Shown: positions 1,075 through 48,116 of the stretch, in pieces | Numbering within the stretch: position 1 is the first letter of the stretch | Layout: every line of letters starts with the position of its first letter | Assembly (NCBI RefSeq): GCF_001194135.2 | Contig: NC_069005.1 | Coordinates: 8,266,810-8,315,019, forward strand | DNA length: 48,210 bases | Reading direction: 5' to 3' | From: Octopus bimaculoides | Taxonomy: Eukaryota | The notes under the pieces: model-generated | Told to the model about the DNA's origin: nothing | Databases searched by the model: none | Seen by the model: the letters and a program-made list of their open reading frames with translations, nothing else | Position numbers and translations under genes: made by a program

Positions 1075-1800
1075 TATGCTAAGAAGAAAGGTTGAATTCT
1101 GCTGTCATTAGGGAATGACCATGCATGGTATGTAGCAGAGGAGTAGTTAGACTATCCATACAGTGTTGTCAGTGTAAACAATGGATGCACAAGATTTGTA
1201 ATGGAATCACCAGCAGGCTAACTGCAAGAATATCTTTATAAGTGGCATATGTACAATGACATCAACCATAAACAACATCCAGGAAATAGATTCTCTCAAC
1301 TAACCTGTTGGCCTCTATAGAAGCAGTGAATAGTTTTTGTTATTTGGGTGATCTTATCAATAGCAGGAGTGGGTGCTCTGAAAGCGTAGTAGACCAGATG
1401 AGATTACGAATGGGCAGGGAAAAGTTCAGGGAGCTACTACCTTTGCTGGCCACAAAGCATCTCTCTCTCTCTGAGTGAAGGGCAGATTGTGATGCTTGGG
1501 TGCAAAATACAATGCTGCACATTAATGTAACTTGGGTTTTATGAATAAAAGATTTGAGAAAGTTACATCAATGAATGAAGTGACTGTGGATGACTGGATG
1601 TGTGAAAGATGGTGCACAAATTCCCCAAGATAAAATCTGTGTATCAGAGGAATCAAATGGTGTGTGCAAGAGAGTAAATTTTGTTTGTATGGACATGTGA
1701 TGCAAATGGATGACAACAGCTGCATAAAAGTGCGCTGAACCATGGAATGGCTGGTGCCTGTGGAAGAGGAAGACCTGGTAAGAGGAAGTGGTGAAAATTG
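1075..1800 (+). mobile_element. RTE-clade LINE, C-terminal part of RT ORF, degenerate (continuation of 300-780)
   Basis: PCMVCSRGVVRLSIQCCQCKQWMHKIC...SFCYLGDLINSRSGCSES...KFRELLPLLATK...; 3' end resembles the GHVMxM and GRGRPxKTW motifs. ORF-track entries 1340-1522 and 1522-1743 are its antisense. Confidence 0.85.
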
Positions 1801-3479: not shown

Positions 3480-4045
3480 ACACATGAGGGTTTTACTGAA
3501 TGTAATGCATAAGTGGGTTTGATTGTTTTTCTTAACTGATATCATTCAAACTGCACATGCTGGTAGAGAAACTTTTCCTCTATACAAAGGTACTATTGAA
3601 CAAAGTCTACTTCCAAAGCAATGAATTTGTGCATTTCTTGAACCTAACTCTCAAAACCTCTTCTAAGAAAATCCGGGTGTGCCCTTCACTGTTATTTTCA
3701 CCTCATCTACCATCATGTCATTGACCCTGAAAAATTTCCTTCACTGGCCTGAATAGGTAAATCACAGAGGGCACCAGATTTTGTCTGTATGGTATATGGG
3801 GGTGAGATGGTGGATGGGGACTACTCATGCCCCATTTTCTGGTTTGTTGCCAAGATGTGTGTAGCCGCACATTGTCTTGGTGAATGTGGCTCAGTTTCAG
3901 ATTCTTGATCAGTTTTTTCCTCTTTATGGCTTCTCTAAGCTTTCTAAATGCTTCATTGTACCTTTCTCTGTTCATGGTACAACTACATCCCAGAAAACCA
4001 TAGAGAATGATGCCTTTGTCACAATGACTTTCTGTGCTGTATTGC
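3480..4045 (-). mobile_element. mariner transposase relic (C-terminal DDD domain) with one terminus
   Basis: Minus-strand decayed motifs VFWD, ERYNEAFRKLREAIKRK, HQDNVRLH (cf. HHDNARPH), PYRQNLVPSVIYLF (cf. PYSPDLAPSDYHLF); TIR-like GAGGG near 3487. Confidence 0.85.
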
Positions 4046-4254
4046 TTGCTTGCATGTCACCGTCATGAAAATAGTGGTGGTTGTGTCCAGTCATCATCAT
4101 CGTTTAACGTCCTCCTTCCATGCTGGCATGGGTGAGACAATGACCTGCAGAAACATGTCTGGCCATACAGAGAAGACACTTTGCTTGGAAACCAATGAGG
4201 TTTGGAGATAGGAAAGGCATGCAGCCATAGAAAATATCTGCTTCAGCAAATTCT

Positions 4255-14165: not shown

Positions 14166-14685
14166 TCATCATCATCATTTAACATCCATTTTCCATGCTG
14201 GCATTGGTTGGATGGTTTGATTGGAGCTGGCAAGTAGANNNNNNNNNNNNNNNNNNNNNNNNNNNNNNNNNNNNNNNNNNNNNNNNNNNNNNNNNNNNNN
14301 NNNNNNNNNNNNNNNNNNNNNNNNNNNNNNNNNNNNNNNNNNNNNNNNNNNNNNNNNNNNNNNNNNNNNNNNNNNNNNNNNNNNNNNNNNNNNNNNNNNN
14401 NNNNNNNNNNNNNNNNNNNNNNNNNNNNNNNNNNNNNNNNNNNNNNNNNNNNNNNNNNNNNNNNNNNNNNNNNNNNNNNNNNNNNNNNNNNNNNNNNNNN
14501 NNNNNNNNNNNNNNNNNNNNNNNNNNNNNNNNNNNNNNNNNNNNNNNNNNNNNNNNNNNNNNNNNNNNNNNNNNNNNNNNNNNNNNNNNNNNNNNNNNNN
14601 NNNNNNNNNNNNNNNNNNNNNNNNNNNNNNNNNNNNNNNNNNNNNNNNNNNNNNNNNNNNNNNNNNNNNNNNNNNNNNNNNNNNN

Positions 14686-14875
14686 TTGCCTTTAGTTAAT
14701 TTAGTACGATCGTTTCACAGTTAAGAGTAAAGAATACTCTATTCTGATCTTCAGCTAAATATTCTAATAAATTTGTTAATGTCTAAATAACTCACGTTAA
14801 TTTTGACCATGTGAACATCAATACCACGTGAGGAAGACGTTAAGAAATTTATCGTACTAAATTAACTAAAGGCAA
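14686..14875. mobile_element. Short element with perfect 25-bp (or longer) terminal inverted repeats, probable MITE
   Basis: TTGCCTTTAGTTAATTTAGTACGAT (14686-14710) is the exact reverse complement of ATCGTACTAAATTAACTAAAGGCAA (14851-14875); left end runs into a gap. Confidence 0.7.
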
Positions 14876-15041
14876 GTGTTTTTGCTCTTCTCTACTGTTT
14901 TTTGTTCTGTGTGTATCAAAAATATCGCTATCAATCTGGAGTAATAATTTGTAGTTTTGAAATCAGTAGTTCTTTGACTGCTATTTCTGAATTCTCAGTA
15001 TGTTGGAGAGGCAGGTTACTGTCAATCCCTATATATTTATG

Positions 15042-15109
<68 letters not shown>

Positions 15110-15114
15110 AATGA

Positions 15115-18959: not shown

Positions 18960-19655
18960 ATGTATATATGCCTGTCTCTCTATCATACTCTAACCTCTCA
19001 ACACCTGGCATAAAGCCACCTCCCCCCTCTACTTCAACCTCACTCACTGGAAGGACTTTTCTTTGTCATACAAGTTACTTGGCAACCTAACTAGTGCTGG
19101 TGTCATGATAAAATGCCCAGTACACTTTGTAAAGTGGTTGCCATTATCAAGGGCATTCACCAGTAGAAACCATATCAAAATAGATATTGGAGCTCAATTG
19201 CAGTCTTCTATTCATTTAATCCTGTGAAACCATTCAATACATACTCTCTTCCTCTCTACCTCCCCCTCTCTCTGGTTAGGTAAACATGTACCTCCTTTAT
19301 AGCAAGACACCCATCTCTGCCTCTCTGTCACATTCTAATCTTTCATCTGACACAAGATCACCTCCTTCAATGCCTTCTCTCCTTTCAAAATTCCTTGTCT
19401 TGCAAGTTACTTGGTGACCCTGCCAGTGCAGGTGCCACTTAGGGCATGAAGCTGTAAAAACCTTGCCAAAGTTGACCTTGCCTGTGCTGGTGCTACATAA
19501 AAAGCACTCAGTCCACTCTGCAAGGTGGTTGGTGTCAGGAAGGGCATCCAGCTGTAAAAACCATGCCAAAAGAAACACAGAAGCCTGGTCAGCTCCTATG
19601 AAAACCACCCAACCCATGCCAGCATGAAAGGGGGGCATTAAAGGATGATGACGAC
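18960..19655 (+). mobile_element. Two tandem family C copies (about 18960-19240 and 19250-19655), each with a pyrimidine-rich leader
   Basis: Both contain CAAGTTACTTGG and GTGGTTG..AGGGCAT(T/C)C; the second ends GGCATTAAAGGATGATGACG. Confidence 0.8.
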
Positions 19656-19968
<313 letters not shown>

Positions 19969-20227: not shown

Positions 20228-20345
20228 CATGGCTGTGTGGTTGAGAAGTTTGCTTCACAACCTCATGGTTTTGGGTTCAGTCCCACTGTGTGGAACCTTT
20301 GGTTGGTGTTTTCTGATATAGCCTTGGGACCAAAGCCTTAACTTA
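20228..20345 (+). mobile_element. SINE family A, 5' fragment
   Basis: ATGGCTGTGTGGTTGAGAAGTTTGCTTCACAACC...GGGTTCAGTCCCACTG. Confidence 0.8.
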
Positions 20346-21357: not shown

Positions 21358-21497
21358 CTACATGGTTTCAGGTTCAGTCCCACTGCGTGGCACCTTGGGC
21401 AAGTGTCTTCTGCTATAGCCTTGGGCTGACTGAAACTTTGTGATTGAATTTTGTAGGCGGAAGTTACTACTGCATGTGTATATGTCTGTGCCACTCT

Positions 21498-21867: not shown

Positions 21868-23827
21868 AATATTTTTGTAGCAGTGTACATATCGCACTGA
21901 ATATGTAGAAACTAAATTTGAACTCAGAACTGTGAAGTACTGAACTAATAAATCATGCAACCCTTTCTCCTTCATTCTTTTTTCATATCAAAATTGCTGT
22001 TTATAATCTAATACAATTCTCTGCAGACTCAGAGATTTTTTTCTTTCTTTCATTGTGTGTGTGTGTGTGTGTGTGTGTATGCATGTGCATGTCAGTGTGT
22101 AAATATGTATGTACAATGTTGTGTGTGTATATACACACACTTAGATAAATATACTTGCATGTCTGTATGTGTATATACATATATAAATATGTATATAAGT
22201 ATATATATATATATATATATNNNNNNNNNNNNNNNNNNNNNNNNNNNNNNNNNNNNNNNNNNNNNNNNNNNNNNNNNNNNNNNNNNNNNNNNNNNNNNNN
22301 NNNNNNNNNNNNNNNNNNNNNNNNNNNNNNNNNNNNNNNNNNNNNNNNNNNNNNNNNNNNNNNNNNNNNNNNNNNNNNNNNNNNNNNNNNNNNNNNNNNN
22401 NNNNNNNNNNNNNNNNNNNNNNNNNNNNNNNNNNNNNNNNNNNNNNNNNNNNNNNNNNNNNNNNNNNNNNNNNNNNNNNNNNNNNNNNNNNNNNNNNNNN
22501 NNNNNNNNNNNNNNNNNNNNNNNNNNNNNNNNNNNNNNNNNNNNNNNNNNNNNNNNNNNNNNNNNNNNNNNNNNNNNNNNNNNNNNNNNNNNNNNNNNNN
22601 NNNNNNNNNNNNNNNNNNNNNNNNNNNNNNNNNNNNNNNNNNNNNNNNNNNNNNNNNNNNNNNNNNNNNNNNNNNNNNNNNNNNNNNNNNNNNNNNNNNN
22701 NNNNNNNNNNNNNNNNNNNNNNNNNNNNNNNNNNNNNNNNNNNNNNNNNNNNNNNNNNNNNNNNNNNNNNNNNNNNNNNNNNNAACCACTTAAGTCATAA
22801 AATGTCTAAGAACTTCAATTATGAAGTCAAGACTCTATATGTTGAGATGTGCTGTGTTGCATCTTCCCTTCTTTAAAAATATATTCATAAAAGCAACATG
22901 TCTATGTATGTAGTGGTGTGTGTTTTTTTCCTTTGTTTTTATTTTTTTTCTGAATATATCAGATATTGAAATAATTTTTTTTTGTCTTCAAATTACATAT
23001 ATTTTGAATGAAAACAAAAAAAAGTGAGTTAATTTTCATAAAGTCTGAACAAAAAAAAAAAAAATGAAAATAAATAACTTCTTCGTTGAACTTGTTAAAA
23101 CTTTAACAACTGATTGGCAGATATAGAAAGACCAAAATAAATAAATTTTTAAAAATAGGTATAAAAAAACCCATCATATCTAATGATTGAATTCTATTGC
23201 AGAAAATTGTTATATAATGATATAACAAAAAAGAATAAAACAAACTCAGGTGAAAAAAAAAAATTACTTGAAATATGACAATAAGGAAAAGTTAAAGCAA
23301 TCTATTGTAAATGTTATGTTATTTAAAAAAATGAAGAAATTCTCCTCACAATGAGGTTTGCCTGAATACTATTGGGGAGAAAAACATCTTAAGATTTTGA
23401 GATTTTTGAGTTGGGGCCCTTCATTTGTGATGAATAAAGTTTGAGAAAAGATTAATGATCATCTCTGCCTTGCAGTAGCAGCTAATGAAAGAGTTTTTGC
23501 ATAAAGTAGATAGATCTGTCTTTGTCAGTTTGACTTGTTCAGTGAAGGAAGGTACAAGTTTGATTGTGTGGTTAAGAAGATTCTTTCATGACCACATGTT
23601 TCCAGGTTCAACCCCACTACATGTTACTTTAAGTGTTCTTCTAATATAGTAATTCCTTTGATAGATGGAAGCTGTACAGAAGTCTATCGAGTGTGTATGT
23701 ATATATAACAACAAAAATAGAGATAGAGAAAATCACATCTTTAATTGTAATTATATATATATNNNNNNNNNNATATATATATATATATTTGTGTGTGTAT
23801 ATGTTTCTGTGCATGTGGCTCTATGTC

Positions 23828-24262
23828 CAAGGCCGATAGGAAGCGGTCCAGCTTCCTAGGGCTAAATAGTAGCAGTATGATTCCCTTATTGGGACTGTCA
23901 CTTTGAGTTGACAGTATACAACTGTTTTATGGTAACACTGCTGCTTAATTCTCTCTGTGAAATTTATAATTAGATCATTTCTAATTTTTGTAATCAGTGA
24001 ATGTGTTTTCACTAAAAATATATATATTTGTGAGAGCTTGGCAGGCATTTTCAACCAGCTAGTGTTGCTACTTCAGGCTGATGACGAGCAATGACTCAGA
24101 AACATGTCCCTGAATGCACACTGAGCTGGGTGGAGGTGCTTGTCTCCCCCTTGCTGGAAATGTGTCAAGGCTGACAGGAAGTGGTCCAGCTTCCTAGGGC
24201 TAAATAGCAGCAGTATGATTCCCTTATTGGGACTGTCACATTGAGTTGACAGTATACAACTG

Positions 24263-24268
<6 letters not shown>
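23828..24268. repeat. Direct repeat of 103 bp (23828-23930 and 24166-24268), period 338 bp, i.e. about 1.3 tandem units
   Basis: Manual alignment, ungapped, 6 mismatches in 103 nt; bounded by (TA)n on both sides. Confidence 0.95.
24055..24129 (+). ncRNA. Minimal type I hammerhead ribozyme (predicted dimer-type)
   Basis: Helix I TTCAGG (24072-77)/CCTGAA (24109-14), extended by TGC/GCA, GTG/CAC and CCAGCT/AGCTGG; core CTGATGA (24078-84); helix II (C)GAG-CAATGA-CTC(A); GAAA (24099-102); palindromic ACATGT; cleavage triplet GTC (24106-08). Confidence 0.8.
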
Positions 24269-24296
<28 letters not shown>

Positions 24297-24370
24297 GGGC
24301 TCTGTAAAGTGTGACACATAACCAAAGATTAGGTTCAGTAGTGGGTTCTAAACCCGCCTCCAGTAGCTAG
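24266..24370 (+). mobile_element. Short Helitron-like element (3' terminus clear, 5' end lost in (TA)n)
   Basis: (TA)nTAAAGGGG start; hairpin GTGGGTT-CTA-AACCCGC (24341-57); 9 nt; CTAG (24367-70) followed by T. Confidence 0.5.
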
Positions 24371-24659
24371 TGTAGTATGACGTATTTATTGTGGGACACT
24401 GATGAGGTGAAGTACACGATGGCATAACATTTCTAAAACTTGTGTAACTATTTCGGCACTTTGATGAAACCTGTATGTTGTACATAGTATTAAATACCAA
24501 ACCTGTTTTCTGCTTATATATTTGTGGGTATATAAGTGCATATATTTATGTGTACGTGTGTATGTTTCCCCTCTCAATTCAATTATCATGGTCTTGATTT
24601 TCATTTAGAGAGTAGCCAATAATGATATAAGCCATTTTAGAACAATATCAAAATATATT

Positions 24660-26754: not shown

Positions 26755-26875
26755 AAACAACTTGGTTTTGGGTTGAGTCCCACTGCATAGAATCTTAGAC
26801 GAATCTTCAATAGCCCTGTGCTGGTCAAGATTTGTGGGTGAATTCAGTAGACAGAAACAGAAAGAAGCCTGTTGT
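26755..26875 (+). mobile_element. SINE family A fragment
   Basis: GGGTTGAGTCCCACTGC...GTAGACAGAAACAGAAAGAAGCC. Confidence 0.7.
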
Positions 26876-27134: not shown

Positions 27135-27397
27135 ATCATCATCATCATCATCATCATCGTTTAACGTCCGCTTTCCATTCTGGCATGGGTTGGACGATTT
27201 GACTGAGGACTGGTGAAACCGGATGGCAGCACCAGGCTCCAATCTAATTTGGCAGAGTTTCTACAGCTGGATGCCCTTCCTAACGCCAACCACTCAGAGA
27301 GTGTAGTGGGTGCTTTTACGTGTCACCCGCACGAAAACGGCCACGCTCGAAATGGTGTCTTTTATGTGCCACCCGCACAAGCCAGTCCAGGGGCACT
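27135..27397 (-). mobile_element. Retroposon family C, young CpG-intact copy running into a gap
   Basis: (CAT)nCGTTTAACGTCCGCTTTCCAT...GGATGCCCTTCCTAACGCCAACCAC. Confidence 0.9.
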
Positions 27398-27964
27398 NNN
27401 NNNNNNNNNNNNNNNNNNNNNNNNNNNNNNNNNNNNNNNNNNNNNNNNNNNNNNNNNNNNNNNNNNNNNNNNNNNNNNNNNNNNNNNNNNNNNNNNNNNN
27501 NNNNNNNNNNNNNNNNNNNNNNNNNNNNNNNNNNNNNNNNNNNNNNNNNNNNNNNNNNNNNNNNNNNNNNNNNNNNNNNNNNNNNNNNNNNNNNNNNNNN
27601 NNNNNNNNNNNNNNNNNNNNNNNNNNNNNNNNNNNNNNNNNNNNNNNNNNNNNNNNNNNNNNNNNNNNNNNNNNNNNNNNNNNNNNNNNNNNNNNNNNNN
27701 NNNNNNNNNNNNNNNNNNNNNNNNNNNNNNNNNNNNNNNNNNNNNNNNNNNNNNNNNNNNNNNNNNNNNNNNNNNNNNNNNNNNNNNNNNNNNNNNNNNN
27801 NNNNNNNNNNNNNNNNNNNNNNNNNNNNNNNNNNNNNNNNNNNNNNNNNNNNNNNNNNNNNNNNNNNNNNNNNNNNNNNNNNNNNNNNNNNNNNNNNNNN
27901 NNNNNNNNNNNNNNNNNNNNNATATATGTATATATATATATATGTATATATAATTTTTTTTTAT

Positions 27965-31317: not shown

Positions 31318-31690
31318 CATCATCATCGTTTAACGTCAGTTTTCCATGCTTGCATGGGTTTGACGGTTTGACTGGGGACTGGCAAGCCAGGAGGCCGCAC
31401 CAGGCTCCACTCTGATCTGGTAGTATTTCTACAGCTAGATGCCCTTCTTAATGCCAACCACTCCGAGAGTGTAGTGGGTGCTTTCTACATGCCACTGGCA
31501 TGGAAGCCAGTAAGGCGGAACTGGCATTGGCCACGTTCAGATGGTGCTTTTTACTTGCCACCGGCACGGGGAGCCAGTCAGGTGGCACAGGCAACAACCC
31601 ACACGTGCATTGTGCTTATTGCATGCCACCAGCATGGAAGCCAGTCAGGCAGCACTGGCATCGGCCACAACTACAGTTTCCATTTGATTG
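31318..31690 (-). mobile_element. Retroposon family C with an internal tandem array of about 67 bp
   Basis: (CAT)nCGTTTAACGTC start; units beginning GCCAC..GCA.GG.AGCCAGT at 31491, 31557, 31625. Confidence 0.85.
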
Positions 31691-37105: not shown

Positions 37106-38344
37106 TGCCGAGCCATGTTGAGCCAGAGTGACAGAATTGACTCATCAAACCAGAATCATCTCAAGCTCAAATTCCTGGCCTCCACATGAGACAGTGGTTG
37201 GTGAAGAAAACATGCTGAGGCCTCGTTTTGTAGTAGACTGAACATGGGCAACCCAATCCAAAAAAGATGAGGTATGCCAGGTCTAAGATATAGTGCTGAA
37301 GAGAGAGGGAAATATAATTGAAGGTGCAGAAAAAGGATGATTGGTGAAAAATACTGTGGGTAGGAATGAGAGTGAGGGATGGATATTAATAGGAAGTGGT
37401 TCCAATGTGAGATGATAAGTGTTATTTAACCCGAGGTCATCTCTGAGCAAGCAAACTTATGTTCAAAAGTATTGTGTGTCTTCCCTGGACAGGGTTTCCC
37501 AACGTCTTTATATGACTGTTACGTATCAATAACTAGTAATTATAATTGTCTGAACATGTTGATTGCTTATAAATCAGCTGCTAAAAAGATATTTATGCAT
37601 TTGTTGCTTTAATTCCATGTTAGTTCTAATTAGACTAACCATTAACTAAAAAACGTCCCAGTTATGACCAGCCTGTTTTATTTCCATGCATAGAGGACTA
37701 CATTATTTACTGCATCCTTTTTTTTTTAAGATAATAGGTTGAGATTGAAGTGGTATTTAACTTCTGTTTCTGGCAGGACAAGTAACTATGTAGAGGAACC
37801 CTCATTGTGTTGTGTTTGTAAATTAATGTGACTGATGTGGCTGGGGGCACTTACTCTGCTTCTAAGTTGTGTGCCCAGTTGAATGTGTGCTTCATCTCTT
37901 ATATCATTAACTGCTTATCACTTTAAACCAGAGATTAAATGATTTAATTTTTCCTGTTGTGTAGTATTTAGTGAATGTTGTGCTTGATCAGATATGAAAC
38001 CAGCTAATCATGTTTAGAATGTGTCTTGAAAGAAACTTATGTTTGAATCAGCATTGAAACATCAAAAGTTCAAACATGACTTGTCTAAATGTTTCATCTG
38101 TAATAAAAGAGCCAGTAGATGCAGTGTGTTAGTGAATGAGTCAGTCTTTGACAATCAATCAAATGGTTTTTCTCACTATGCAGTCTAGTATGTTTATACA
38201 TGTGTGTGTGTGTGTGTGTGTGTGTGGTAGCAGCAATGTTTTAGTTACTAAACCCCCTTCTCTTTCTTAGTTTAATGATGATGAGAAGATGCTTTCAATG
38301 AGATCAACACCAGTGATTGGCTGATATTTTATTCACCCTGCCAA

Positions 38345-38610
38345 TTTTGTGTGGCTGGCCACATTCTCCATTCAGCTAATCAATGGTACTTGAAAACAGC
38401 CATGACTTGGGATCCACCTGTCGGCCACTGTAAAAGGGATAGGCTGAAAATCACTTGGTGGTAGGCATTTCTTGATTACTGACCTGAAGACAGTCAACAT
38501 TATGTAGCATGAAGGAGTAAGAGAAGCAGCTGACCAAACAAGGGGAAGAAGCTTGCCATCCAATGTGCTGAAGATCATAAGAGGCTTAAGCCAAAAAAAA
38601 AAAGAAAAAA
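38345..38610 (+). mobile_element. RTE-type LINE 3' terminus with A-rich tail, degenerate
   Basis: WLATF../..WDPPVGHCKRDRLKITW..DLKTVNIM (cf. WxPxGxRxRGRPKxTW...DL), ending in AAAAAAAAAAGAAAAAA. Confidence 0.6.
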
Positions 38611-47150: not shown

Positions 47151-47619
47151 ATAGTTTCAAGAATAAGAAATTAATTTTAAAAAAATTTAGATCCCAAGCA
47201 AAATTGTTGACCTTGAACTAAAATTTCAAACACACAAACACACACACACACACACACACAAAACAAAACAAAAGAAAAAAAAAATTCTTAAGCAACTAAT
47301 CCAAACTTCAAGCAGAATATTGCTGCTTCAAAACCACAAGCTAAATAAATCTAGCGAAAACCCTTCCACTAACAACTACAATTATAGTAACACCAATAAT
47401 TTCTCACTCAATAATAGCTGTTTAACTAAGGACATAGTCTATAAATGCATAAATGTGTTGTTGACACTCACCATTCATCCAGTGTGTGTGTGTCTGTATA
47501 TACACACACATACATAAATGCACTATGTGGTCAAAACCGCATTAACTGTTATTGTGTATGTGTTTTCCTCCTTTTAACTAAGTATTGTGTGATTTGAGGG
47601 AGATTTAGTTGCTACATCT

Positions 47620-47815
47620 AGCATTATTATCCAGCTATCCCATTCTTGGTCTACCCATAGCCTACTGGTTGGCCCACCTTGGAGAATCCATCTTGCAATT
47701 CTTTCCTGCAACACTCTAATCGCATGTCCATAGTACTTGAGCTGTGACCTCCAAATGCAGAGAAGTGGAAGCTCAACTTGGAGAGTCTCTCTCTGAGCTA
47801 AGCACCATGTCAAAT
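47620..47815 (-). mobile_element. RTE-type LINE C-terminal fragment
   Basis: WRSQLKYYGHAIRVLQERIARWILQG (cf. RxRQLRYxGHxxRxxxERxAxxILxG). Confidence 0.55.
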
Positions 47816-48116
47816 AATGTTACTCTAAAAATCCTTGATGTCTGTAGTAAAAAAAAGAAAGAAAAAGTTTAAACAGATAGGTCCTTGGTAGTGAAAAGGT
47901 TGGAAATCACTGACTTGGAGAATTCCTCATTGGCTTATAATTGAGTCATTTGGTTAGTGGCAGTGATGAATATCCTGCTGTAAAAGTAATTACTGTAACA
48001 AAAGTAAATCCTATCAACATGTCAGCATGGAAAATTGGATGTACAACGAGCTTTCTGATAGCAGAAATAAAATTGAGATTTTATAAAATTCTTTAATAGA
48101 TGCAACTGACACTAGC

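What the first reader, a model, noticed from the sequence alone, without database searches (positions are those of the whole stretch)
24055..24129. Minimal type I hammerhead ribozyme with a palindromic helix III (dimer-activated type)
Seen: every conserved core nucleotide in correct order (C3UGAUGA9 at 24078-84, G12AAA at 24099-102, GUC17 at 24106-08). Helix I is a perfect 6 bp closing the core, extended by about 13 more pairs out to CCAGCU/AGCUGG. Helix II is GAG/CUC. Helix III has only 2 bp and a 2-nt loop, but is the palindrome ACAUGU. Known: minimal type I hammerheads with palindromic helix III occur in Penelope-like elements and metazoan tandem repeats and are thought to cleave as dimers. 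Caveat seen: the basal helix II pair is C24085-A24098, a mismatch that one CpG transition from C-G would explain, so this copy may be weakened. Predicted cleavage is 3' of 24108.
Basis: partly seen in the sequence, partly recalled or inferred. Interest (0 to 1): 0.88.

Follow-up and report, generated by a model that had tools for sequence, protein, structure and literature searches.

The report
Hammerhead ribozyme in a retrozyme-like repeat
This is a real but ordinary hammerhead self-cleaving RNA motif of the kind that animal genomes carry by the thousand inside small mobile repeats, and this copy is a lone, mutated and probably weakened one.

Summary
The full hammerhead core, a 6-bp helix I extended by 13 more pairs, a 3-bp helix II with a C·A mismatch at its base, and the palindrome ACAUGU as helix III are all at the stated coordinates.

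It is not chance. My descriptor expects 0.004 such motifs per shuffled window. A covariance model built only from four experimentally validated animal retrozyme hammerheads ranks it first in the window (20.6 bits, E about 0.001). Rfam's own models do not detect it.

The motif sits in 1.3 tandem copies of a 338-bp, 41% GC unit (about 23828-24268). The unit is strongly self-complementary (z = -5), has (TA)n on both sides, and no coding sequence lies nearby. That is the architecture of metazoan non-LTR retrozymes, the non-autonomous relatives of Penelope-like elements. Helix III (GAAACAUGUC) is identical to that of an axolotl retrozyme hammerhead that cleaves efficiently only as a dimer.

This locus has one ribozyme, about 6% divergence between its repeated parts, and a probable CpG-decay mutation in helix II. 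It is most likely a fossil copy.

A second hammerhead-like motif lies at 14699-14760 on the minus strand.

No related copies could be retrieved, so covariation is untested. Verdict: new member of a known kind, low interest.

The parts
23828..24268 (+). Whole element: 1.30 tandem copies of a 338-bp non-coding unit (retrozyme-like insertion). The 5' boundary is about 23824-23828. The 3' boundary merges into (TA)n at about 24268-24270.
   Evidence: Direct repeat D8 with spacing 338. Gapped alignment of the two ends. No other copy in the window. No coding ORF.
23828..23930 (+). First copy of the 103-bp segment that is present twice.
   Evidence: D8, 94% identity.
24166..24268 (+). Second copy of the 103-bp segment. 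It has 6 differences from the first: 5 C/T transitions (2 at CpG) and 1 transversion.
24055..24129 (+). Type I hammerhead motif including the extended helix I.
   Evidence: MFE -26.6 kcal/mol, z = -3.3.
24072..24077 (+). Helix I, 5' strand (UUCAGG).
   Evidence: Pairs with 24109-24114, six Watson-Crick pairs.
24078..24084 (+). Core C3 U4 G5 A6 U7 G8 A9.
24085..24098 (+). Helix II (C·A mismatch at 10.1/11.1, then GAG/CUC) capped by loop 2, CAAUGA.
   Evidence: The mismatch is marked 'v' in the model alignment.
24099..24102 (+). Core G12 A13 A14 plus A15.1.
24102..24107 (+). Helix III, the palindrome ACAUGU. As a monomer it forms 2 bp with a 2-nt loop. Between two copies it forms 6 bp.
   Evidence: Identical to axolotl Ax330. 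Self-duplex -6.0 kcal/mol. Double-hammerhead fold -23.0 kcal/mol against -15.8 for two monomer folds.
24108..24109 (+). Predicted cleavage site, 3' of C17 (C24108).
   Evidence: Inferred from the hammerhead rule (cleavage 3' of H17). Not tested.
24109..24114 (+). Helix I, 3' strand (CCUGAA).
23773..23787 (.). (TA)n microsatellite upstream. A 10-N assembly gap lies at 23763-23772, and 36 nt of TG-rich sequence (23788-23823) separate the microsatellite from the element.
24266..24293 (.). (TA)14 microsatellite directly abutting the 3' end of the element.

Best explanation
The motif is a genuine hammerhead ribozyme of the canonical metazoan type I class. It is carried by a small non-coding retroelement of the non-LTR retrozyme kind, the non-autonomous relatives of Penelope-like elements.

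Inferred life cycle of the family:
1. Tandem units of 338 nt are transcribed.
2. Hammerheads of neighbouring units pair through the palindrome ACAUGU into a double hammerhead and cut 3' of C17.
3. The released 338-nt RNA, which is strongly self-complementary, is ligated into a circle.
4. A Penelope-type reverse transcriptase copies the circle for more than one round.
5. The product inserts at (TA)n microsatellites. This would give exactly the kind of 1.3-unit copy flanked by (TA)n seen here.

This particular locus is most likely an old, solo insertion. It has a single ribozyme, so no unit-length RNA can be released. Its duplicated parts have diverged by 6%. Helix II has lost its basal pair (C24085·A24098), probably through CpG to CpA decay. 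At most it would cut a + strand transcript once, between 24108 and 24109, and inefficiently.

Shown: the anatomy, its statistical significance, and its similarity to validated retrozyme hammerheads. Inferred: cleavage, dimer dependence, circular RNA, and the mobilisation route.
For: - Core and helices verified.
- Descriptor hits: 2 observed against 0.004 expected per window.
- Model R1 was built only from coral, mussel and two axolotl retrozyme hammerheads taken from Supplementary Table 2 of PMC7229834. With filters off it ranks the motif first in the window at 20.6 bits, E about 0.001.
- Architecture matches the published definition: helix I 6 bp, helix II 4 bp, helix III 1-2 bp with a palindromic loop (PMC4209133).
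- Helix III is identical to Ax330 / HHR_Amex1, which needs a dimer for efficient cleavage.
- A mismatch at the base of helix II (U·U) occurs in the active axolotl HHR_Amex2.
- Host unit: 338 bp in 1.3 tandem copies, GC 41%. This compares with 'about 300 bp monomers, GC <45%' for animal retrozymes.
- The predicted circular monomer folds at -106.2 kcal/mol against -82.1 +/- 4.8 for shuffles, z = -5.0.
- (TA)n flanks and the partial-tandem form match the insertion habits of Penelope-like elements (PMC8557442).
- Retrozymes are argued to be non-autonomous PLE derivatives, with solo monomers common (preprint 10.64898/2026.07.22.740005).
- Signs of decay: CpG observed/expected 0.215; transition-dominated 6% divergence between the repeat copies.
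Against: - Rfam's hammerhead models give no hit even at E<=10.
- R1's score is driven mostly by the core string. Decoy loci selected for carrying that string reach 18.2 bits.
- No related copy was found in the window, in viral contigs, in metagenomes, or through spurious-ORF protein search. Conservation and covariation are therefore untested.
- The 10.1/11.1 pair is broken, and even if restored it would be C-G rather than the usual G-C.
- Only one ribozyme is present.
- There is no Penelope-like ORF in the 48 kb.
- The source organism could not be identified with the tools.
- No target-site duplication could be shown. A GGCTCT hexamer on both sides is weak evidence.
Confidence: 0.8

Rival explanations
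1. Chance: an ordinary hairpin in repeat-rich DNA whose loop happens to spell the hammerhead core.
For: Rfam finds nothing. Core strings alone are common in large databases, with 34 viral and 9 metagenomic matches, and they score up to 18.2 bits with R1. No homologous copies are available to show conservation.
Against: - Expected 0.004 per window with helix I and II pairing required. None of the 43 decoys has both helices.
- Helix I is extended by 13 further pairs.
- The motif sits in a 338-bp tandem unit of retrozyme size and composition with z = -5 folding.
- A second independent motif with a palindromic helix III is in the same window.
Confidence: 0.04
2. A live retrozyme array collapsed by the assembly. 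The real locus would hold several near-identical 338-bp units, each with a hammerhead, able to form dimers and release circular RNA.
For: The scaffold is a gap-rich draft with 11 N gaps. One gap lies 55 bp upstream of the element. Short-read assemblies collapse tandem repeats, and 1.3 copies is what a collapsed n.3 array would look like.
Against: Both junctions of the element with unrelated sequence are assembled. The two overlapping parts differ by 6%, which is unlike a young homogeneous array. The only hammerhead visible carries a helix II mismatch.
Confidence: 0.1
3. A solo pseudo-LTR or other fragment of an autonomous Penelope-like element, rather than a non-autonomous retrozyme.
For: PLE pseudo-LTRs carry type I hammerheads. 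PLEs insert in (TA)n as partial tandems, often with 30-40-bp tails. A 36-nt stretch lies between (TA)n and the element.
Against: No RT or GIY-YIG ORF or remnant was seen in the window. The repeating unit is 338 bp, not 3-4 kb. The motif has the canonical form (helix III present, 4-position helix II, 6-bp helix I), not the min-HHR form described for metazoan PLE pLTRs.
Confidence: 0.1
4. A C/D-box small RNA or other structured small RNA, suggested by the UGAUGA and CUGA boxes.
For: Weak Rfam matches to archaeal C/D-box families (sR9 12.2 bits, sR47, sR41, sR3) on 24061-24126.
Against: All are far below gathering scores, with E of 3 or more in an 86-nt search. The boxes are only 25 nt apart. The CUGA lies inside helix I rather than next to a terminal stem. 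The matched families are archaeal, while the window is a eukaryote-like scaffold.
Confidence: 0.01

Closest known systems
Metazoan non-LTR retrozymes with canonical type I hammerheads (Cervera & de la Peña 2020, PMC7229834), for example axolotl Rtz_331 (HHR_Amex1) and Rtz_353 (HHR_Amex2), mussel Mg353, coral Amil224
   Same: - Type I topology with a 6-bp helix I and a short helix II.
- Very short palindromic helix III; GAAACAUGUC is identical to Ax330.
- Unit length 338 bp, against 330-353 bp.
- GC 41%, non-coding, tandem arrangement, highly structured monomer.
- A basal helix II mismatch also occurs in HHR_Amex2.
- Top hit of a model built from these four sequences.
   Different: - Only 1.3 units and one ribozyme, where the described arrays run from dimers to large multimers.
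- C·A at 10.1/11.1 instead of G-C or U·U.
- No detectable sequence similarity outside the ribozyme.
- Expression, cleavage and circular RNA are unknown.
- Host organism unidentified. My recollection that the SINE-like repeat at 20264/21361/26761 is an octopus SINE is unverified.
Newt/salamander satellite 2 and Schistosoma Sm-alpha hammerhead repeats
   Same: Repeats of about 330-335 bp carrying a type I hammerhead with a weak helix III that acts as a dimer (as described).
   Different: Those are high-copy tandem or SINE-like families with demonstrated transcripts. Here a single decayed copy is seen and nothing is known genome-wide.
min-HHR of Penelope-like element pseudo-LTRs (Cervera & de la Peña 2014, PMC4209133)
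   Same: Type I, dimer logic, association with the PLE-style insertion signature ((TA)n, partial tandem).
   Different: min-HHRs lack a helix III/loop 3, have a longer helix II (7-8 bp) and a shorter helix I (4-5 bp), and flank an RT-EN ORF. None of that applies here.

Membership tests
Hammerhead ribozyme, type I | Conserved core C3 U4 G5 A6 N7 G8 A9 / G12 A13 A14 / A15.1-U16.1 / H17, in this order | tested here: met
   CTGATGA 24078-84, GAAA 24099-102, T24107, C24108.
Hammerhead ribozyme, type I | Three helices around the core, with helix I open-ended | tested here: met
   Helix I has 6 bp plus 13 further pairs. Helix II has 3 bp. Helix III has 2 bp as a monomer or 6 bp as a dimer.
Hammerhead ribozyme, type I | Paired 10.1/11.1 at the base of helix II (usually G-C) | tested here: not met
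   C24085 lies opposite A24098. Three of the four validated comparators have G-C and one has U·U.
Hammerhead ribozyme, type I | Match to the Rfam hammerhead covariance models (Hammerhead_1 and relatives) | tested here: not met
   No hammerhead family listed at gathering score or at E<=10.
Hammerhead ribozyme, type I | Site-specific self-cleavage 3' of position 17 | not testable with these tools
   Needs in vitro transcription or RNA end mapping.
Hammerhead ribozyme, type I | Conservation and covariation of the helices among homologous copies | tested here: inconclusive
   No homologous copy could be retrieved. The source genome is not available in the collections.
Canonical metazoan type I HHR of non-LTR retrozymes | Helix I 6 bp, helix II 4 bp, helix III 1-2 bp capped by a 2-4 nt palindromic loop (PMC4209133) | tested here: met
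   6 bp; 3 bp plus one mismatched position; 2 bp plus a 2-nt loop within the palindrome ACAUGU.
Canonical metazoan type I HHR of non-LTR retrozymes | Similarity to validated members when scored by a model built from them | tested here: met
   R1 gives 20.6 bits, E about 0.001, rank 1 of the window. The margin over core-string decoys is modest, with the best decoy at 18.2 bits.
Canonical metazoan type I HHR of non-LTR retrozymes | Embedded in short tandem repeats (about 170-400 bp) of low GC, non-coding | tested here: met
   338-bp unit, 1.3 copies, GC 41%, no ORF.
Canonical metazoan type I HHR of non-LTR retrozymes | At least two consecutive units each with a complete hammerhead (criterion for an 'active' retrozyme in preprint 10.64898/2026.07.22.740005) | tested here: not met
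   One hammerhead only. The second partial unit ends 103 bp in.
Canonical metazoan type I HHR of non-LTR retrozymes | Loop 1 - loop 2 tertiary contacts | not testable with these tools
   An internal loop UAC/U sits 6 bp from the core and loop 2 is the 6-nt CAAUGA. Whether they interact needs structure probing or activity data.
Canonical metazoan type I HHR of non-LTR retrozymes | Unit-length linear and circular RNAs in vivo | not testable with these tools
   No transcriptome data. The only indirect support is that the predicted monomer is unusually stable (z = -5.0).
PLE pseudo-LTR min-HHR | Located in direct repeats flanking an RT plus GIY-YIG ORF | tested here: not met
   No such ORF among the ORFs of 90 aa or more in the window.
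PLE pseudo-LTR min-HHR | No helix III/loop 3, helix II 7-8 bp, helix I 4-5 bp | tested here: not met
   Helix III present, helix II 3-4 positions, helix I 6 bp.

The most novel reading that the evidence does not exclude
The 338-bp unit could represent an undescribed, still active retrozyme family in a lineage where none has been reported. If my unverified recollection of the SINE is right, that lineage is a cephalopod. The family consensus would carry an unusual flipped C10.1-G11.1 base pair, and other loci would produce abundant 338-nt circular RNAs. This locus would then be one decayed offspring of that family.
Probability: 0.3. Interest if true: 0.35.

Novelty: new member of a known kind. 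Interest (0 to 1): 0.22.

Why it matters
Hammerhead-bearing retrozymes are a known, very abundant class of animal mobile elements, so one more copy changes little.

Its value is practical:
- It flags that this genome harbours at least two hammerhead-carrying repeat families that Rfam's models miss.
- It gives a 338-bp query for cataloguing them.
- It provides a natural C·A variant at the base of helix II that could be compared with its presumed C-G ancestor.

If the family proved active, it would extend circular-RNA retrozymes to another animal lineage.

Tried and rejected
- Rfam cmscan at three scales found no hammerhead. The weak hits (DUF3085, mir-1994, mir-133, archaeal C/D sRNAs, SECIS_3) all have E above 1 and are rejected as noise.
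- blastn of the unit against the window found no other copy, only microsatellite matches.
- A viral-contig scan for the core string gave 34 loci, all without helices, so chance.
- A metagenome scan with a stricter string gave 9 loci, all chance-like. L038 is marginal, with a 5-bp helix I of which 2 bp were forced by the pattern.
- I tried to reach paralogous copies through spurious ORF products. The 83-aa minus-strand ORF of the unit has no homologue in the protein collection.
- Organism identification failed. Two window ORFs are not on record, a full-text search for the SINE string found nothing, and there are no tRNA-like genes.
- A search for PLE coding remnants found no convincing ORF. Four TE-like fragments were scanned against Pfam, and only a sub-threshold mariner Transposase_1 match appeared.
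- The third R1 hit, 31489-31527, lacks the core and helix III and is rejected.
- CTGATGAG at 24399 downstream has no GAAA and no helix I partner, so it is rejected as a hammerhead by inspection.
- The dimer cofold MFE is not the double hammerhead: -28.6 against -23.0 kcal/mol. Thermodynamic prediction therefore neither proves nor excludes the dimer mechanism.

Full report
**Observation**

- CTGATGA (C3-A9) at 24078-24084.
- GAAA (G12, A13, A14, A15.1) at 24099-24102.
- The palindrome ACATGT at 24102-24107.
- C17 at 24108.
- Helix I is TTCAGG (24072-77) paired with CCTGAA (24109-14), six Watson-Crick pairs.
- Beyond an internal loop (UAC 24069-71 opposite U24115) the stem continues for 13 more pairs to CCAGCT/AGCTGG. 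One U (24066) and one G (24123) are bulged.
- Helix II is GAG/CTC with the 6-nt loop CAATGA. Its basal position is C24085 opposite A24098, a mismatch.

As a free 75-mer the RNA folds at -26.6 kcal/mol, z = -3.3. The minimum-energy fold keeps helix I and its extension but pairs part of the core with helix III.

**Is it more than chance?**

I wrote a type I descriptor requiring CTGANGA, helix II with at least 3 of 4 pairs next to the core, GAAA, A15.1...U16.1, H17, and at least 5 contiguous helix I pairs.
- It finds two motifs in the window: the finding, and a second one on the minus strand.
- Over 3000 dinucleotide-preserving shuffles of the window it finds on average 0.0043 motifs with a 6-bp helix I and 0.009 with 5 bp.
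- As a negative control, the bare core-plus-helix-III string occurs in 34 viral contigs and, in a stricter form, in 9 metagenome contigs. None of these combines a helix I of 5 or more pairs with a helix II of 3 or more contiguous pairs.

Rfam 15 does not recognise the motif. There is no hammerhead hit at gathering thresholds over the whole window, nor at E<=10 in 301-nt or 86-nt stretches.

I therefore made an independent test.
- I took four experimentally characterised retrozyme hammerheads (coral Amil224, mussel Mg353, axolotl Ax353 and Ax330) from Supplementary Table 2 of PMC7229834.
- I aligned them (A1), built a covariance model with the textbook structure (R1), and searched the window on both strands with filters off.
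- The finding is the best hit at 20.6 bits, E about 0.001 with rough calibration.
- The second descriptor motif is next at 16.2 bits, E about 0.02.
- Everything else is at E of 0.1 or more and lacks the core.
- A caution: the score comes largely from the core string. Decoy loci chosen from huge collections for carrying that string reach 18.2 bits.

The strength of the case therefore rests on the combination of core, helices, the 13-pair extension and the context.

**Context**

- The window is a eukaryote-like draft scaffold with 11 N gaps, dense TA/TG/CA microsatellites, 20-40% GC, and no tRNA genes.
- There are no convincing coding ORFs. In particular there is no reverse transcriptase or GIY-YIG endonuclease.
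- The motif lies between two 103-bp direct repeats, 23828-23930 and 24166-24268. They are 94% identical and spaced 338 bp start to start. The locus is therefore 1.30 tandem copies of a 338-bp unit.
- The 3' end runs straight into (TA)14 (24266-24293).
- On the 5' side there is a (TA)n tract (23773-23787) preceded by a 10-N gap. It is separated from the element by 36 nt of TG-rich sequence.
- The unit has no other copy in the window.
- The RNA that two cleavages would release is 24109-24165 joined to 23828-24108: 338 nt, 41% GC. As a circle it folds at -106.2 kcal/mol, against -82.1 +/- 4.8 for 200 shuffles (z = -5.0, none as stable). Helix I continues into a long closing stem.

**What it is**

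These features match published descriptions.
- PMC4209133 defines the canonical metazoan type I hammerhead as helix I of 6 bp, helix II of 4 bp, and helix III of 1-2 bp capped by a 2-4 nt palindromic loop. That helix III is too weak for monomeric activity but active when two copies pair.
- PMC7229834 shows that such motifs reside in tandem repeats of about 300 bp with GC below 45%. These non-LTR retrozymes are expressed as unit-length linear and circular RNAs.
- In the same paper, axolotl HHR_Amex1 has a one-pair helix III with a palindromic tetraloop and needs a dimer. HHR_Amex2 carries a U·U mismatch at the base of helix II and still cleaves (22% in 1 h, better as a dimer).
- The candidate's GAAACATGTC is identical to Ax330.
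- PMC8557442 reports that Penelope-like elements insert preferentially in microsatellites such as (TA)n. They insert as partial tandems, often with a 30-40-bp tail and with inverted 5'-truncated copies.
- The 2026 preprint 10.64898/2026.07.22.740005 argues that animal retrozymes are non-autonomous PLE derivatives, and distinguishes solo monomers, dimers and multimers.

A 1.3-unit copy between (TA)n tracts is what more than one round of reverse transcription on a circular 338-nt template, followed by PLE-type integration, would produce. That step is inference.

**State of this copy**

- Only one hammerhead is present, so a single transcript of this locus cannot form the double hammerhead or release a monomer.
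- The two 103-bp copies differ at 6 positions. Five are C/T transitions, two of them at CpG. This indicates an old insertion.
- The window is strongly CpG-depleted: observed/expected 0.215, with TpG+CpA at 1.40.
It would restore a 4-bp helix II, CGAG/CUCG.
- It is not proven, because no other copy is available. The restored pair would also be C10.1-G11.1 rather than the usual G-C seen in three of the four comparators.
- Nearest-neighbour energies give -23.0 kcal/mol for a double hammerhead, with swapped helix I strands and a 6-bp intermolecular ACAUGU helix. Two monomeric hammerhead folds sum to -15.8 kcal/mol. A different extended duplex is the dimer MFE at -28.6. These calculations allow the dimer mechanism but do not demonstrate it.

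**Rivals**

- Chance is very unlikely for the reasons given above.
- An assembly-collapsed live array cannot be excluded in a gap-rich draft. However, both junctions are assembled and the overlapping parts are 6% diverged.
- A solo PLE pseudo-LTR is possible, but the repeat unit is 338 bp, no ORF remnant is nearby, and the motif is not of the min-HHR form.
- The C/D-box-like Rfam hits are noise.

**Limits**

- No homologous copies could be obtained from the window, viral contigs, metagenomes or the protein collection.
- The organism could not be identified. My impression that the SINE-like repeat at 20264/21361/26761 is an octopus SINE is from memory only.
- No paper in the library describes hammerhead retrozymes in cephalopods. 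That is absence of evidence within one library.

**Verdict**

In the published nomenclature the motif is the canonical retrozyme type rather than the 'minimal' PLE type. It is a new member of a well-known kind and probably a decayed solo copy. Interest is low, about 0.2. The main by-products are the 338-bp host unit and a second hammerhead-like motif in the same window.

Noticed in passing
window 14699-14760, minus strand (context 14686-15110): A second type I hammerhead-like motif: AUUUAG CUGAAGA UCAG...CUGU GAAA CGAUCG UA CUAAAU.
- Helix I is 6 bp. There is a U·U at the base of helix II. Helix II is long and interrupted.
- Helix III, ACGAUCGU, is an 8-nt palindrome.
- It was found by my descriptor and is the second-best hit of model R1 (16.2 bits, E about 0.02).
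- Its 3' helix I strand is part of a perfect 25-nt inverted repeat (14686-14710 / 14851-14875).
- It abuts the N gap 14239-14685. (TA)38 lies at 15030-15106.
- It is unrelated in sequence to the first element and may be a PLE-type insertion with an inverted truncated copy.
   Followed up: partly
window 20264-20328, 21361-21425, 26761-26825: A dispersed SINE-like repeat (…GGTTCAGTCCCACTGCGTGGCACCTTGGGCAAGTGTCTTCT…) in three copies at 60-85% identity. From memory it resembles an octopus SINE. A full-text search for the string found nothing, and ARAGORN finds no tRNA-like head.
   Followed up: partly
window 3820-4056, minus strand: A decayed mariner-like transposase fragment: Pfam Transposase_1, E 2.5e-4, 21.3 bits, below the 24-bit cutoff. 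LINE-like RT C-terminal-looking fragments at 1290-1475 (+), 38285-38461 (+) and 47577-47819 (-) gave no Pfam hit.
   Followed up: partly
window 22185-22746 and 27398-27959: The 'inverted repeats' of about 560 nt at 98-99% reported by the repeat finder are runs of N (assembly gaps 22221-22783 and 27398-27921) with TA-rich edges. They are an artefact, not a feature.
   Followed up: yes
window 23817-23822 and 24299-24304: The hexamer GGCTCT occurs just upstream of the element and just after the 3' (TA)14. It is a possible remnant of a target-site duplication, but it is short enough to be chance. The 36 nt at 23788-23823 between (TA)n and the element could be the 30-40-bp 'tail' described for PLE insertions.
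   Followed up: no
window 19297-19758 (-) and 27213-27400 (+): Two ORF translations share the string FLQLDALP(D/N)(T/A)NH. This indicates another dispersed repeat family in the window. It was not characterised.
   Followed up: no
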